DNA of 63,985 nucleotides, filler included, from Octopus bimaculoides (taxonomy: Eukaryota): assembly GCF_001194135.2 (NCBI RefSeq). It is 6 parts of 6 records of this genome, joined end to end, with 100 filler letters (N's around TTAATTAATTAA, not from the genome) between each part and the next. Parts side by side here need not be neighbours in the genome. Positions count along the whole stretch, not along the records: positions 1 to 24,346 come from NC_069002.1; 5 more parts are not named here. One strand, 5' to 3'. The notes under the pieces were generated by a model. That model was not told the DNA's origin. It saw only the letters and a program-made list of their open reading frames with translations, and made no database searches. A program made the translations under genes and the position numbers. The first letter of the stretch is position 1. Each line of letters opens with the position of its first letter. Shown here piece by piece: positions 2,154-22,314 of this stretch.

Positions 2154-2371
2154 CCTACATTGATTCAATCTCCAGTGTGACGAGCTTCAACAACGAGGTG
2201 CAATACAAGCTGGAGCTTATCTGTTGGTTGCCAAAATTGTTTAGATTGGAGAAGCAAGAGAATGAAGAACCTTTCTTGAAAATTATTCAGAGTTTGGATG
2301 CGATTAAAGATATTTATCCCGAATCCTTTTTGGAAGAGACAACAGAATTTTTTACACAGCTCAAGAAACAA
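2154..2371 (+). CDS. TERF1/TERF2: Telomeric repeat-binding factor homolog, TRFH domain exon (218 nt, phase 1 to 0)
   Basis: Acceptor tttgtttcag, donor CAA|gtgagt; (A)YIDSISSVTSFNNEVQYKLELICWLPKLFRLEKQENEEPFLKIIQSLDAIKDIYPESFLEETTEFFTQLKKQ aligns with human TRF1 AIIHGLSSLT...YICQFLTRI...TPLESALMIWGSI...LIKIQ as recalled. Confidence 0.85.
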
Positions 2372-2781
2372 GTGAGTATTTATGTATATTAGTGTTTGTG
2401 TGTCTTTGTGTATGCGTGTTTGTGTGTGTGTGTGTATGTATGTGTGATTTTGTGTGTGTGTCTATATGGAGTGCAGACAGAGTCAAATGATTAAATAATT
2501 CTCTATGTACTCTTGAGCTCCTGGGTTCAGTCCCACTGTGCAGCACCTTAGCAAAGTGTATTCTGCTATAACATTGCATCCATCCAATGCTTGTCAGTGA
2601 AATTAGGTACATGGAAACCGTGTGGAAGCCTATTGAACAGACTATAACTGTAATTCAAAAATGTGGCCTTGTCACACACTGTGTGTCATGCACATTCTGC
2701 CTGAAGATTATGGTAAGCGTTTGAATGTCTGTAGAATAGTCAGCCACTTACATTGTAATGCAAGAAATAGGAGATTCCATT

Positions 2782-3185
2782 CATCATTATTTAACATTCA
2801 CTTCCCCATGTTTGCATAGAATTTGTTGAGAATTTTCTTTGGTCAGAAGCTTCTCCTGTTACTAACCCTCACTTATATCCAAACAAGGTCATATTTTCCC
2901 ATGACCAGACATGTTTTTCACAGAAACTGAAGCTTGGAAATGAATGACTCTTCTTATATGATGGATACACTTGTCTACAACTATCAGACAATATCTAGAC
3001 AAGGAGACACAAACACACACATACGTAATGGGATTTTTTAAGTTTCTATCTACCTAATGCACTCATAAGGCTTTGAGGGATATAGGAATATAGTAGAAAA
3101 CACTTGCTCAAGGTGCCATGCAGTGGGACTGAACCCAGACCCATGTGGTTGGGAAGCAAACTTCTAAACCACACAGGTATACCTG
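2782..3185 (-). mobile_element. CORE-type SINE with RTE-like 3' tail (family A-II), decayed
   Basis: Minus strand: tRNA-like head, CACCTTGAGCAAGTG CORE-like motif, central (TG)n, tail ending in GATGA repeats; homologous to 9177-9590. Confidence 0.7.
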
Positions 3186-18957: not shown

Positions 18958-20138
18958 ATGGTTGCATTCATCCTGCCTCCAGACACCATCAATGCATTTA
19001 TAGAGCTTGTGGGTGACGATGATTTGCCACAAGAACTTGTGGCATATTTTGAAATGCATTACATTGGTGAGGGGAGAGGCAGGGGAGCTCGTAGACATAG
19101 AGTTCCTCCTACTTTTCTTATCGGTCTTTGGAATATGTATGGAAGAACCCTATATCAGCTGGAAACACCAACAATGGAGTAGAAGGTTTCCATAATGCAC
19201 TGCAAGAATCTGTTACAAATACTCATCCAAATTTATTGGAACTTATCAATGTCTTAAGAAATGAAGAATCTCTTTCTAAAAAGAAGGTAAACAATGCAAC
19301 AAGAGGAGAAACTGCAACCAAGGAAAAAAACAAAGATGTTTGTAAGCGCATACTAAGCATTGTCAGAGGTTACGATCAAAATCAAAACCAGCATTATTTG
19401 AATGCAATTGCAATGAACTTAGATGATTTTTAGCTTTTTAGTTTTTTAGCTTAACTTTTTAAATAAAGAGTATGATTTAGAAAATTACTATTTTTAAATC
19501 TCACAATGAGAGATATTCAGCAACAGTACTTTGTAGTAAAGATTATTTGCCAACATAACATGGCAGTCCTGGTTTAGGACGAATGTTACTGTAACTTTAG
19601 AAACATTCATCCTAAACCAGGACTGCCATGTTATGTTGGCAGACAGTCTTTACTCCAAAGTACTGTTACTGAATATCTCTCGTTGTGAGATTTAAAAATA
19701 GTAATTTTCTAATTTATAGACCAGTGACTAGTTGTCACTTTGAAAACTATATATTTTGAACGGGAATTTGGCAGTGGCACCTCTATCCAAACAATTATTC
19801 TGTGCTGATGAAGGGAAATAACCTGGAAATCGCGATACAGATATTGTTTTGAAAATATAAGGACACAGATCATGTTGTATAGCCTGCTGGAGAGATGATG
19901 TCTCCCGGGGTTAAATTACAGCAACATTCGTCCTATACCAGGACTGCCATGTTATGTTGGCAGACAGTCTTTACTCCAAAGTGTATGACCTTCATTATTT
20001 TTATTTTTAATTTTATTTTTTATCCTTCTCTTCTTATGCTTTACTACAAAATGTCCTTGCGGTGAAATACCTGTATAGTGAATTGCCTTACAGTGAATAG
20101 TCCTACAGCCAATTGCTTTACGGCGTCTTGTCCTAGAA
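18958..20138 (+). mobile_element. MULE-type transposase C-terminal remnant with probable 3' terminus
   Basis: VAFILPPDTINAF..L..YFEMHYIG...PPTF..GLWNMY.R / TNNGVEGFHNAL...HPNLLELI.VL.NEE with one frameshift, stop at 19433; short GGTGAAAT/AGTGAAT-type tandem motifs at 20045-20138. Confidence 0.75.
19477..19712. repeat. Long inverted repeat (111-bp arms, 14-nt loop) inside the MULE remnant; third arm copy at 19914-19982
   Basis: TTGCCAACATAACATGGCAGTCCTGGTTTAGGA / TCCTAAACCAGGACTGCCATGTTATGTTGGCA. Confidence 0.9.
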
Positions 20139-22243
20139 AAGTGAATGTTAAAATGCTGATGTAATTATTGGATTCCCAGAGGAAGACATTTACTCCAAGA
20201 GCCTACTACTTTTATGAACTCATTTCTTATGTCATTGGTAATTAGTGTATGGTAATGAGATTTCTTTTGATCTTTTTTTTGTCTTCATTTTTATGTCTAT
20301 TTTTCTTTGGTAGCATGGGTTAGGTGAATATATTATTGGCCATTGTTATTACCCCTGGAAAAACAGACATAGAACGGACAAACAAGTAATAAACTGGTAG
20401 TGGAGTGTGAGAAGGGGGTGGATTATCATCATCATCACCATCATCAGCACCATCATCATTATCATTTAAGATCCATTTTCCATGCTGGTATGGGTTGGAC
20501 AGTTTGATAGAAACTTGTAAGGCTTGGGGTTGCACCAGGTTCCACAGTCTGCTTTGACATGGTTTGTACAACTGGACGCCATTCCTAATGCCACCCACTC
20601 CACAGAGTGTACTTGCTGCTTTTGAAGTGACACCACCACCCACACCAACGCTACTTATGTAGTAATTACAGTTTTTGGTACTTACACTGGCCATATCCGG
20701 CCCAAATATTCTCCCTGTTTTATGTTCAAACTGGCCAGATCTGGCCTCTCACACCTATCCAACAATGTCATTCTAAAAATAAACTATCACTTCATCAAAA
20801 TCTCAAAGCTACAAGATAAGGCATTGATTAATTCAAAGCTATGTAAATAAATAAGGGTTGCATCTAACAGAGAACCCTGAATGTGAAACGGTTAAAGGGT
20901 TAAAAGTATTCCTGATTCTGTGTACATTTTGTGTGTAGCTTTGTGGGTGCATCAGTGGAATAGATACCAGTCATATATTGAGGGAGAGGTTTGATTTAAT
21001 TAACTAATGGGTTCCAGGCATGGCTCCGTGGTTCATCATGTTTGCCTCAGTTACTATGTGGTGTTGGGTTCAATCCTACTGCATGGTACCGTGGGGGTAA
21101 ATGTCTTCTACTATTACAGCTTTGAGCTGACCAATGTCTTTGGAGTAGAATTGGTAGCAGAAAACTATATGGAAATCTATCGCATATATACATCTATTTA
21201 TTTCCTCTTATTCCTTTTTGTGGAAGAGCATTGGCTCGAAACGTAAAAGACATTTCCATTCTTTTTGAGCGTCAAACTAATACACTTATTTGTTGTTTCT
21301 ACACAAGTCTTCATCTTTGTTTTTCTATAAATTTGAACTACATCTACATGTATATATATATATATNNNNNNNNNNNNNNNNNNNNNNNNNNNNNNNNNNN
21401 NNNNNNNNNNNNNNNNNNNNNNNNNNNNNNNNNNNNNNNNNNNNNNNNNNNNNNNNNNNNNNNNNNNNNNNTATATAAAGCTGAAGTTGTGTGTCTGTGT
21501 GAAGCCTTTTTAAAAGTTTATAGAAATCCACATTTTCCACTTTTTCGTAAAAATTTTTACATCAATGGAATTTTCTCGATGTGAACTTTCCAGTGCAGTA
21601 ATTAGATTTTTTAAATTCCGTTTACTTTGTGTGATTTAAGGGAGATTTGGCTGTTGTTTCTAGCACCTTTTATATTTCTTCCTTTCTACCTGGAACAGCA
21701 TTCTTACACACGCGCTCAACAGAGAGAGAAAGTGATACATACAACGTCATAGATTAAACTTTACCTATTTTTCATAACATTGATACGCAAAAACACACAC
21801 AACCACACATACGTAATCTGTGCCAACAACATACACATTGCTCCCGTTCTCTATCTCCCCCTCTTCCTCTCTTCCTCTCTCGCTCTCTCAATCGCATACA
21901 CGTGCAAGTAAACACAATCATTCACGTTCGTCAATGTGGCATAACTACAGAGTTGTACTCACCGACTTTGGAAGGTCATAACTTTCAGAAAAAGTCTTGG
22001 TCCCCTGTTATCCCTTCTGTGAGTCCCAACTTTTGTAGATCCTTTCTCACCACTTGCCCTCCCCCATTGCTGGCCTTGTATCAAAATTTGAAACCAATAA
22101 TTCTACCAGCTCACAACTCTCCCTTCCTTTTACAGATTGCGGTCTTTCGTATCAATATAAATAAATCAATTTACGTCTCGTATTCTGAACCATATTCTAA
22201 GTGATGCCTTTAATGGTATCTGTTGTGTGTTTCCTATGTTTAG

Positions 22244-22314
22244 GCTGCCAGCAGAGCACTAGAAACGGAGAAGAAAGACAGTTCTGGTATCGTTGATAGC
22301 CAAAAGAAAATCAG
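22244..22314 (+). CDS. TERF1/TERF2: TRF homolog, end of TRFH domain and start of hinge (71 nt, phase 0 to 2)
   Basis: Acceptor ttcctatgtttag, donor CAG|gtaagt; AASRALETEKKDSSGIVDSQKKI versus TRF1 AAAKVVESKR. Confidence 0.85.

What the first reader, a model, noticed from the sequence alone, without database searches (positions are those of the whole stretch)
2154..22314. Hidden shelterin gene: a TRFH-domain telomeric repeat-binding factor with vertebrate-like intron positions
Seen: four GT-AG exons of 218, 87, 126 and 71 nt splice in frame (phases 1-0-0-0-2) into about 167 aa of helical protein; the ORF track shows only the first. Recalled knowledge: human TRF1 reads AIIHGLSSLT, LIKIQ|AIAVCMENGNFKEA and SSTFLMK|AAAKVVES at its exon joints; this protein reads AYIDSISSVT, LKKQ|CILLCSQEVGFVAA and STAFLVQ|AASRALET. 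As I recall them, human TERF1 exons 2+3 total 218 nt from a phase-1 Ala and exon 4 is 87 nt, so this gene would lack one vertebrate intron and share the others. Inference: a divergent invertebrate co-ortholog of TERF1/TERF2 that simple annotation could miss.
Basis: partly seen in the sequence, partly recalled or inferred. Interest (0 to 1): 0.88.

Follow-up and report, generated by a model that had tools for sequence, protein, structure and literature searches.

The report
Octopus telomere-binding TRF gene, dimerisation-domain exons
The four exons are real and encode most of the dimerisation (TRFH) domain of the octopus version of the telomere-binding proteins TRF1/TRF2, a correct but unsurprising identification of a gene that databases list only as "uncharacterized".

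Summary
Four AG/GT-bounded exons on the + strand (2154-2371, 5415-5501, 18681-18806, 22244-22314; 218/87/126/71 nt; phases 1-0-0-0-2) splice in frame. They equal residues 51-218 of RefSeq XP_052831708.1, "uncharacterized protein LOC106873135" of Octopus bimaculoides. Both assembly gaps lie inside introns.

The interpretation also holds.
- A TRFH-only profile built from cephalopod sequences alone hits only TRF1/TRF2 TRFH chains in the PDB (E 6e-6 to 6e-4; next hit 0.11).
- hhalign against vertebrate TRFs gives 96% probability.
- An AlphaFold model of the O. vulgaris orthologue (pLDDT 77) matches only TRF1/TRF2 TRFH structures (TM 0.55-0.65).
- Orthologues carry a C-terminal telobox Myb domain. 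An intact Myb exon lies about 18 kb downstream of the window in O. bimaculoides.
- All four intron positions and phases coincide with rhinoceros TERF1 and turtle TERF2. Exon lengths are 96+122=218, 87 and 150 nt in TERF1, and 218, 87 and 150 nt in O. sinensis. One vertebrate intron is absent.

Corrections: the split first codon is Thr, not Ala. The gene is annotated, though unnamed and truncated. Pfam's TRF model does not detect it. TIN2 is rejected.

This is a new, fast-evolving member of a known family; invertebrate TRFs were described by Myler et al. 2021. Interest is modest.

The parts
2154..2371 (+). Exon 2 of LOC106873135 (218 nt, enters in phase 1, leaves in phase 0). It encodes residues 51-123. 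Its length equals vertebrate TERF1 exons 2+3 (96+122 nt).
   Evidence: Splice sites. Identity to RefSeq protein. Same 218-nt exon in O. sinensis and Argonauta hians. Rhino TERF1 96+122 nt.
5415..5501 (+). Exon 3 (87 nt, phase 0/0), residues 124-152 (CILLCSQEVGF...KLNK). It has the same length and phases as TERF1 exon 4 and TERF2 exon 4.
   Evidence: Rhino TERF1 12877-12963 and turtle TERF2 25539-25625, both 87 nt.
12271..12351 (+). Alternative cassette exon (81 nt, 27 aa EELLQQSRVLSSPSKRREDETGTTDEG) used in RefSeq isoforms X1 and X2. It is species-specific and not part of the conserved TRFH.
   Evidence: Canonical cag|...|gtaaac. No counterpart in the O. sinensis locus.
12890..12961 (+). Second cassette exon (72 nt, 24 aa EEQSHVLSSPSERGVDETETTDKG), isoform X1 only. 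It is a duplicate copy of the previous one.
   Evidence: It lies in a tandem duplication (12187-12507 vs 12809-13135, 84% identical).
13324..13677 (.). Assembly gap inside the intron between exon 3 and exon 4. It does not interrupt coding sequence.
18681..18806 (+). Exon 4 (126 nt, phase 0/0), residues 153-194. It is 150 nt in O. sinensis and in TERF1 exon 5. O. bimaculoides has a 24-nt in-frame deletion after the sixth base.
21366..21471 (.). Assembly gap inside the intron between exon 4 and exon 5.
22244..22314 (+). Exon 5 (71 nt, phase 0 in, phase 2 out), residues 195-218. It encodes the last TRFH helix (AASRALETEKK) and the start of the hinge.
   Evidence: The 71-nt orthologous exon in O. 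sinensis is.

Best explanation
The window holds exons 2-5 of the single-type cephalopod orthologue of the vertebrate telomeric repeat-binding factors TRF1/TRF2. This is an invertebrate, pre-duplication TRF. These exons encode about 80% of the TRFH domain, an all-helical module through which TRF proteins homodimerise and dock partner proteins.

The full gene has ten exons in O. sinensis and O. vulgaris. It continues through a hinge to a C-terminal telobox Myb domain (LKDKWR). By analogy with TRF1/TRF2, that domain reads duplex TTAGGG repeats, the telomere repeat reported for octopus.

Shown here:
- the exons, their splicing in frame, and purifying selection;
- homology to TRFH by profile, by predicted fold and by shared intron positions;
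- the Myb domain in orthologues, and an intact Myb exon downstream in O. bimaculoides.

Inferred from the family, not tested: homodimerisation, TTAGGG binding, telomere localisation and a shelterin-anchoring role.

The O. bimaculoides RefSeq models (272-323 aa, no Myb) are most likely truncated. Exon 7 is cut by an assembly gap, so the models read through the exon-6 donor into the intron.
For: - Exons and identity to RefSeq.
- Pairwise comparison: BLASTP against human TRF1 TRFH is collinear over the whole domain (16-204 vs 2-199, 20% identity, E 0.001). Smith-Waterman shuffle z = 10.9 (TRF1) and 6.4 (TRF2) for the O. vulgaris TRFH; z = 7.4 (TRF1) for the window peptide, 0/1000 shuffles.
- Profile against the PDB: cephalopod-only TRFH profile gives 13 best hits, all TRF1/TRF2 TRFH, E 5.7e-6 to 6.4e-4; the first unrelated hit is at 0.11. 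The full-length profile hits TRF2 at 1.9e-10.
- hhalign against 12 vertebrate TRFs: 96.1%, E 3.4e-9.
- Fold: AF2 model from a cephalopod-only MSA has pLDDT 76.7, pTM 0.72 and nine helices. The Foldseek top 29 hits are all TRF1/TRF2 TRFH, TM 0.51-0.65, then a drop to TM <0.26.
- Myb: Pfam PF00249 at 29-38 bits against a cutoff of 24.4 in O. vulgaris, Argonauta and a transcript-derived protein. The best PDB Myb hits are telomeric: TRF2, zebrafish Terfa, TRF1 and plant TBP1. The K-D-K-W-R motif fits the K-D-R/K-W/Y-R rule of Myler et al. (PMC8653790).
- Myb exon in O. bimaculoides: L004 60080-60370, same strand, open, dN/dS 0.41.
- Transcript evidence: one intronless 394-aa ORF joins TRFH and Myb in Logan contig L005.
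- Intron positions: rhino TERF1 codons 103 (phase 1), 175, 204, 254 against O. sinensis codons 44 (phase 1), 116, 145, 195. The offset is a constant 59 codons. Turtle TERF2 has the same positions. Argonauta has exons of 218/87/144 nt with a split GCG Ala codon.
- Telomere repeat: TTAGGG in octopus (Adachi 2014, cited in PMC13218726).
Against: - Pfam's TRF model (PF08558) does not match any single cephalopod sequence, even at E 1-10.
- phmmer of the peptide against the PDB finds nothing relevant.
- phmmer of the 272-aa protein against 1.84 billion representatives finds only cephalopod proteins. The link to TRF therefore rests on profile, fold and gene-structure evidence at about 15-20% identity.
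- Foldseek E-values are modest (3e-3 at best).
- No O. bimaculoides transcript or model joining these exons to the Myb exon was seen. All three RefSeq isoforms stop before it.
- O. bimaculoides lacks 8 residues (YSSILGVL) that are present in all other cephalopod sequences and align to a conserved TRF1/TRF2 helix.
- Whether octopus has a second, more canonical TRF gene was not testable here.
Confidence: 0.9

Rival explanations
1. In O. bimaculoides the real products are the Myb-less, TRFH-only proteins that RefSeq models (272-323 aa, ending in intron-6 read-through). On this view the gene is TRF-derived but works without DNA binding, for example as a dimerisation partner, a dominant-negative regulator, or a TIN2-like bridge.
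For: - All three RefSeq isoforms end with the read-through peptide VNDFKYFHFFS* and lack Myb.
- The species has its own cassette exons and an 8-residue deletion in the TRFH.
- The gene evolves fast, at about 80% amino-acid identity between congeners.
Against: - Exon 7 is cut by an assembly gap (L004 55537-55819; FEENAFTHP starts right after it). That alone explains the truncated gene models.
- Exons 8, 9 and the Myb exon are present, on the same strand and open, with dN/dS 0.41.
- The O. vulgaris and Argonauta models and a transcript contig join TRFH to Myb.
- The same read-through peptide is encoded in O. sinensis simply because the intron start is conserved.
Confidence: 0.06
2. The protein is the octopus TIN2 (TINF2) orthologue. 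TIN2 also has an N-terminal TRFH-like domain and no Myb domain.
For: The annotated O. bimaculoides proteins have a TRFH-like N-terminus and no Myb domain. Myler et al. report TIN2 TRFH domains in all metazoans.
Against: - hhalign of the cephalopod alignment against the human TIN2 TRFH gives probability 0.4%.
- TIN2 chain 5xyf_A is in the PDB copy but is absent from the profile hits at E<=10 and from the 50 Foldseek matches listed.
- Shuffle z is 0.4-1.0.
- Orthologues carry a telobox Myb domain.
- Intron positions match TERF1/TERF2.
Confidence: 0.02
3. The N-terminal helical region is a lineage-specific domain unrelated to TRFH, attached to a Myb domain. On this view the resemblance to TRF1 is chance similarity between helical sequences.
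For: There is no Pfam TRF hit. Identity to TRF1 is only about 20%. Foldseek E-values are not below 1e-3.
Against: Four independent lines agree:
- profile hits that are exclusive to TRF1/TRF2;
- hhalign at 96%;
- whole-domain TM of 0.6 to TRFH only;
- four of four intron positions and phases, and identical exon lengths of 218/87/150 nt.

If four introns were placed at random among roughly 600 sites, the chance that all four fall on the five vertebrate positions is of order 1e-9. This is my estimate from simple counting, not a modelled probability.
Confidence: 0.02

Closest known systems
Vertebrate TRF1 (TERF1), TRFH domain (e.g. PDB 1H6O, 3BQO, 8W8G)
   Same: - All-helical TRFH fold in the model (TM 0.55-0.64).
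- Collinear alignment over the whole domain.
- Identical distance between the first and last shared introns (455 nt in O. sinensis and in rhino TERF1).
- Identical exon lengths of 218 (=96+122), 87 and 150 nt with the same phases.
- C-terminal telobox Myb domain in the full-length orthologues.
   Different: - About 20% identity.
- Lacks the vertebrate exon 2/3 intron.
- No acidic N-terminus.
- The Phe142 docking-site residue aligns with a gap. Myler et al. say that site is vertebrate-specific.
- O. bimaculoides lacks 8 residues aligned to the KSKLLMII helix.
Vertebrate TRF2 (TERF2) and the single TRF2-like TRF of invertebrates (Myler et al. 2021, PMC8653790)
   Same: - TRFH + hinge + C-terminal Myb architecture with the K-D-K-W-R motif.
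- Same intron positions (turtle TERF2 96+131, 87, 147 nt).
[quoted passage not shown] O. bimaculoides has Ala there.
- As reported for mollusc TRFs, there is no obvious acidic iDDR-like stretch just upstream of the Myb. This was judged by eye on P0003 and not analysed further.
   Different: - More divergent than the invertebrate TRFHs described there (36 +/- 10% identity to vertebrates, against about 15-20% here).
- Undetected by Pfam PF08558.
- No basic/GAR N-terminus.
- Octopus is not named in the main text of that paper.
TIN2 (TINF2) TRFH-like domain (PDB 5XYF)
   Same: A helical TRFH-type domain at the N-terminus of a shelterin protein. The truncated RefSeq octopus models likewise lack a Myb domain.
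   Different: There is no detectable sequence or profile similarity. TIN2 has no Myb domain, whereas the full-length cephalopod protein has one.

Membership tests
TRF (TERF1/TERF2-type telomeric repeat-binding factors) | TRFH domain recognisable by sequence profile | tested here: met
   The cephalopod TRFH profile hits only TRF1/TRF2 TRFH chains in the PDB (E 5.7e-6 to 6.4e-4; next hit 0.11). hhalign against vertebrate TRFs gives 96.1%, E 3.4e-9. Shuffle z is 10.9 and 6.4.
TRF (TERF1/TERF2-type telomeric repeat-binding factors) | Match to Pfam PF08558 (TRF) at its gathering score | tested here: not met
   No PF08558 hit for the window peptide, P0001 or P0002 at E<=10, nor for P0003, P0006 or P0007 at E<=1. 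The precomputed Pfam column is empty or Myb-only for all cephalopod proteins. This reflects the sensitivity of one curated model; it is not by itself evidence against homology.
TRF (TERF1/TERF2-type telomeric repeat-binding factors) | TRFH three-dimensional fold | tested here: met
   Tested on the O. vulgaris orthologue (80% identical). The AF2 model has pLDDT 76.7 and pTM 0.72 from a cephalopod-only MSA. The Foldseek top 29 hits are all TRF1/TRF2 TRFH, TM 0.51-0.65, probability 0.99-1.00. The model of the O. bimaculoides protein itself was too poor to judge. This is a prediction, not an experimental structure.
TRF (TERF1/TERF2-type telomeric repeat-binding factors) | C-terminal TRF-type (telobox) Myb domain with K-D-R/K-W/Y-R in helix 3, on the same polypeptide as the TRFH | tested here: met
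   Met in the O. vulgaris, Argonauta hians and two transcript-derived orthologues (PF00249 29-38 bits; LKDKWR). The best PDB Myb matches are telomeric. In O. bimaculoides the Myb exon is intact about 18 kb downstream of the window (L004 60080-60370). No model or transcript joining it to these exons was seen, and it lies outside the window.
TRF (TERF1/TERF2-type telomeric repeat-binding factors) | Gene structure shared with TERF1/TERF2 (intron positions and phases) | tested here: met
   Four of four octopus TRFH introns coincide in position and phase with rhino TERF1 and turtle TERF2. Exon lengths are 218 (=96+122), 87 and 150 nt. One vertebrate intron is absent.
TRF (TERF1/TERF2-type telomeric repeat-binding factors) | TRFH-mediated homodimerisation | not testable with these tools
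   No multimer prediction or experiment is available here.
TRF (TERF1/TERF2-type telomeric repeat-binding factors) | Binding to duplex TTAGGG repeats and telomere localisation | not testable with these tools
   There is only indirect support: the telobox motif is conserved, and the octopus telomere repeat is reported as TTAGGG.
TRF (TERF1/TERF2-type telomeric repeat-binding factors) | Being the only TRF gene of the genome (one-to-two orthology with TERF1/TERF2) | not tested
   The whole octopus genome could not be searched. The capped searches found one cephalopod family only, but they would be borderline for a canonical paralogue.
TIN2 (TINF2) | TIN2-type TRFH-like domain (similarity to 5XYF / TINF2_N) without a Myb domain | tested here: not met
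   hhalign probability is 0.4%. There is no TIN2 hit at E<=10. z is 0.4-1.0. A Myb domain is present in orthologues.

The most novel reading that the evidence does not exclude
Cephalopod TRF may have diverged unusually far from the ancestral TRFH because its partner set changed. In O. bimaculoides the locus may really express Myb-less, TRFH-only isoforms. These would carry lineage-specific cassette exons and an 8-residue helix deletion, and would modulate telomere binding by heterodimerising with the full-length protein. That would be a natural analogue of engineered dominant-negative TRF alleles.
Probability: 0.08. Interest if true: 0.5.

Novelty: new member of a known kind. Interest (0 to 1): 0.3.

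Why it matters
It gives a functional name to a cephalopod gene that RefSeq lists as "uncharacterized protein" and that the O. vulgaris annotation calls "myb F". It also shows that the O. bimaculoides and O. sinensis models are truncated or split.

The finding adds a cephalopod TRF to the catalogue of invertebrate shelterin. This TRF is much more divergent than the invertebrate TRFs described so far and is invisible to the Pfam TRF model.

The exact conservation of four intron positions and three exon lengths between octopus and TERF1 indicates that this exon plan (218, or 96+122, then 87 and 150 nt) predates the protostome-deuterostome split, and that vertebrates gained or octopods lost one intron. 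This helps people annotating shelterin in molluscs or studying cephalopod ageing and telomeres. It does not change the current picture of shelterin evolution.

Tried and rejected
- Single-sequence Pfam scans of the peptide and of five cephalopod proteins gave no TRF hit. Only weak chance hits appeared (ParM_N, TraM).
- phmmer of the peptide against the PDB returned only designed armadillo repeats at E>0.1.
- The first AlphaFold job, on the 272-aa O. bimaculoides isoform with a 4-sequence MSA, gave pLDDT 56.7. Its Foldseek top hit was TRF1 but at E 0.61, so it is unusable.
- Exact-sequence contig look-ups failed for non-longest isoforms (P0001, P0011, P0012). I switched to P0130, P0017 and P0056.
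- The human TRF1+TRF2 profile search returned only vertebrate proteins among the 120 listed, so no other invertebrate TRF was available for comparison.
- Supplementary tables of Myler et al. are not held, so I could not check whether an octopus TRF is in their list.
- A weak minus-strand resemblance to exon 4 at 924-989 is at chance level (E 0.3-0.9) and is flanked by stops.
- Pfam on the longer intronic ORFs gave only a sub-threshold PHD hit.
- TIN2 was considered and rejected.

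
Full report
**What is in the sequence**

The piece (1-24346) is AT-rich, repeat-laden animal DNA. On the + strand there are four exons with canonical acceptor and donor sites:
- 2154-2371 (218 nt)
- 5415-5501 (87 nt)
- 18681-18806 (126 nt)
- 22244-22314 (71 nt)

They join in frame with phases 1-0-0-0-2 and give 167 residues without a stop.

The two assembly gaps inside the finding (13324-13677 and 21366-21471) both lie within introns. 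The orthologous O. sinensis locus has no gaps. An intronless transcript contig from another cephalopod shows no extra constitutive exon at those joints. Coding continuity therefore does not depend on the gaps.

**Whose gene it is**

The spliced peptide is 100% identical to residues 51-218 of XP_052831708.1, "uncharacterized protein LOC106873135 isoform X3" of Octopus bimaculoides. The window equals CM046622.1 (GCA_001194135.2) at locus L004 19955-44300 and is bounded by gaps on both sides.

- Exon 1 (residues 1-50) lies about 10 kb upstream of the window.
- Exon 6 lies about 8 kb downstream of the window.
- RefSeq isoforms X1/X2 add two cassette exons inside the window, 12271-12351 and 12890-12961. 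Both have good splice sites and lie in a 330-bp tandem duplication with no counterpart in O. sinensis.

The gene is therefore not unannotated. It is unnamed.

**Is the N-terminal region a TRFH domain?**

Direct scans fail.
- Pfam PF08558 is not hit by any single cephalopod sequence.
- phmmer against the PDB finds nothing relevant.
- phmmer against 1.84 billion representatives finds only cephalopod proteins.

(i) Pairwise comparison. BLASTP against the human TRF1 TRFH is collinear end to end (16-204 vs 2-199, 20% identity, E 0.001). My recalled TRF1 sequence was verified as identical to 3BQO. Smith-Waterman scores exceed all 1000 shuffles: z = 10.9 against TRF1 and 6.4 against TRF2 for the O. 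vulgaris domain, and z = 7.4 against TRF1 for the window peptide. Against TIN2, z is 0.4-1.0.

(ii) Profile against the PDB. A TRFH-only profile of seven cephalopod sequences has as its 13 best hits only TRF1 and TRF2 TRFH chains (E 5.7e-6 to 6.4e-4). For TRF2 the alignment spans the whole domain. The next hit is at E 0.11.

(iii) Profile against profile. hhalign against 12 vertebrate TRF1/TRF2 sequences gives 96.1% probability, E 3.4e-9.

(iv) Predicted fold. An AlphaFold model of the O. vulgaris TRFH, built from a cephalopod-only alignment, reaches pLDDT 76.7 and pTM 0.72 with nine helices. Because the alignment contains no vertebrate TRF, the test is not circular. In Foldseek its top 29 hits are all TRF1/TRF2 TRFH crystal structures (probability 0.99-1.00, TM 0.51-0.65 over about 210 columns). 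After those, scores collapse to TM <0.26.

**Domain architecture**

The O. vulgaris protein in the same 90% cluster (412 aa, named "myb F isoform X1") continues through a hinge to a C-terminal Myb domain. So do the Argonauta hians protein (516 aa) and two transcript-derived proteins (394 and 352 aa).
- The Myb domain passes Pfam's threshold (PF00249, 29-38 bits against 24.4).
- It carries LKDKWR, which fits the K-D-R/K-W/Y-R motif that Myler et al. use to define TRF-type Myb domains (PMC8653790).
- Its best PDB matches are telomeric Myb domains: TRF2, zebrafish Terfa, TRF1 and plant TBP1.
- A 1382-nt Logan contig carries TRFH and Myb in one uninterrupted ORF, which is transcript-level evidence that they are joined.

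In O. bimaculoides the Myb exon is intact on the same strand at L004 60080-60370. Exons 8 and 9 are present, and exon 7 is cut by an assembly gap (L004 55537-55819). All three RefSeq isoforms end in VNDFKYFHFFS*, which is simply the translated start of intron 6. The Myb-less models are therefore most likely artefacts of the gap.

The TRFH exons (dN/dS 0.31) and the Myb exon (0.41) are both under purifying, if relaxed, selection between O. bimaculoides and O. sinensis.

**Intron positions**

I fetched a mammalian TERF1 locus (black rhinoceros, L002) and a reptile TERF2 locus (green turtle, L003), and mapped their exons.

| Gene | Exon 1 ends | Following exon lengths (nt) |
|---|---|---|
| Rhino TERF1 | phase 1, in the Ala of E\|AIIHG | 96, 122, 87, 150 |
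| Turtle TERF2 | phase 1, in the homologous Ala | 96, 131, 87, 147 |
| O. sinensis | phase 1 | 218, 87, 150, 71 |
| Argonauta hians | phase 1, split GCG Ala codon | 218, 87, 144 |
| O. bimaculoides | phase 1 | 218, 87, 126, 71 |

In codon numbers, the TERF1 introns fall at 103 (phase 1), 175, 204 and 254. The octopus introns fall at 44 (phase 1), 116, 145 and 195. That is a constant offset of 59 codons.

All four octopus introns in the TRFH therefore coincide with vertebrate ones in position and phase. The vertebrate intron splitting the 218 nt into 96+122 is absent. This evidence does not depend on any alignment and is very unlikely by chance. My rough estimate, from random placement of four introns among about 600 sites, is of order 1e-9.

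**Rivals**

- TIN2, the other shelterin protein with a TRFH-like domain and no Myb, shows no similarity (hhalign 0.4%). It is absent from the PDB profile hits although 5XYF is in the library.
- A truly Myb-less O. bimaculoides protein cannot be excluded without cDNA. It is disfavoured by the intact, constrained Myb exon and by the gap in exon 7.
- Chance helical similarity is excluded by the convergence of four independent lines of evidence.

**Mechanism**

By membership in the family, the protein should homodimerise through the TRFH encoded here. It should bind duplex TTAGGG repeats with its two Myb domains; TTAGGG is the repeat determined for an octopus (Adachi 2014, cited in PMC13218726). 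It should anchor the rest of shelterin at chromosome ends. Dimerisation, DNA binding and localisation are inferred, not shown.

**Comparison and novelty**

Myler et al. 2021 showed that invertebrates, molluscs included, have a single TRF2-like TRF defined as TRFH plus a C-terminal Myb domain. Octopus is not named in their main text, and their supplement is not held here.

This gene fits that definition, so it is a new member of a known kind. Its distinguishing traits are:
- unusually high divergence: about 15-20% identity to vertebrate TRFH, against the 36 +/- 10% reported for other invertebrates, and invisible to Pfam;
- a TRF1-like exon-length pattern;
- in O. bimaculoides, an 8-residue in-frame deletion (YSSILGVL, aligned to the TRF1 KSKLLMII helix) and species-specific cassette exons.

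Its claimed interest (0.88) is too high. I score 0.3.

Noticed in passing
window 12187-13135 (+); cassette exons 12271-12351 and 12890-12961: Two alternative exons used by RefSeq isoforms X1/X2 sit in a 330-bp tandem duplication (84% identical copies), just before the first assembly gap. They insert 27 or 51 acidic, Ser-rich residues exactly at the conserved phase-0 intron after the 87-nt exon. They have no counterpart in the O. sinensis locus. They are probably recently exonised intronic sequence.
   Followed up: partly
window 18681-18806 (exon 4), after base 18686: There is a 24-nt in-frame deletion relative to O. sinensis (150-nt exon). It removes YSSILGVL, a segment present in all other cephalopod sequences and aligned to the conserved LL.II helix of TRF1/TRF2. 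Whether the O. bimaculoides TRFH tolerates this, or whether it is an assembly or individual variant, is unknown.
   Followed up: partly
L004 52278-60370 (O. bimaculoides, downstream of the window): All three RefSeq isoforms of LOC106873135 end in a read-through of intron 6 (VNDFKYFHFFS*). Exon 7 is cut by an assembly gap (L004 55537-55819). Exons 8-9 and an intact telobox Myb exon (60080-60370) follow but are outside the annotated gene range (L004 10001-52316). The O. sinensis annotation likewise splits the gene into separate TRFH and Myb models.
   Followed up: yes
window 17798-18508 (-): There are two adjacent ORFs (166 and 69 aa). The first has the ...RRLRWYGHVVRM... type of sequence that I know from the C-terminal part of non-LTR retrotransposon reverse transcriptases. 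The second gives a sub-threshold PHD-finger hit (21.6 bits against 24). This is a degraded mobile-element fragment in the intron, only about 170 bp upstream of exon 4.
   Followed up: partly
window 18958-19433 (+): Two overlapping ORFs in different frames (74 and 101 aa) look like one frameshifted coding remnant in the intron between exons 4 and 5. They have no Pfam match. The origin is unknown; it may be a transposase relic.
   Followed up: partly
window 8970-9107, 10811-10880, 11384-11735, 13164-13323, 15275-15453, 15685-15819, 17041-17470, 20442-20623, 22815-23012: There are at least nine copies, in both orientations and 75-88% identical, of a SINE-like interspersed repeat (translating as ...LQSDLAEFLQLDALPNANHSESVV...). 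Many copies also occur in the O. sinensis locus. Dinucleotide microsatellites flank every assembly gap.
   Followed up: partly
window 924-989 (-): A short stretch translates to DDISAIISSMLNERAESPFLVQ, faintly like the exon 4 peptide (DDISSLISAYLKKYLLTGSTAFLVQ). E is 0.3-0.9 within this window alone, and there are stops on both sides. I judged it to be chance.
   Followed up: yes
L006 8666-8950 (Argonauta hians orthologue): The hinge of the Argonauta TRF contains about eight tandem copies of a 10-residue unit (DRGHSEVTERP) that is absent from Octopus. This shows how freely the hinge evolves in this gene.
   Followed up: no
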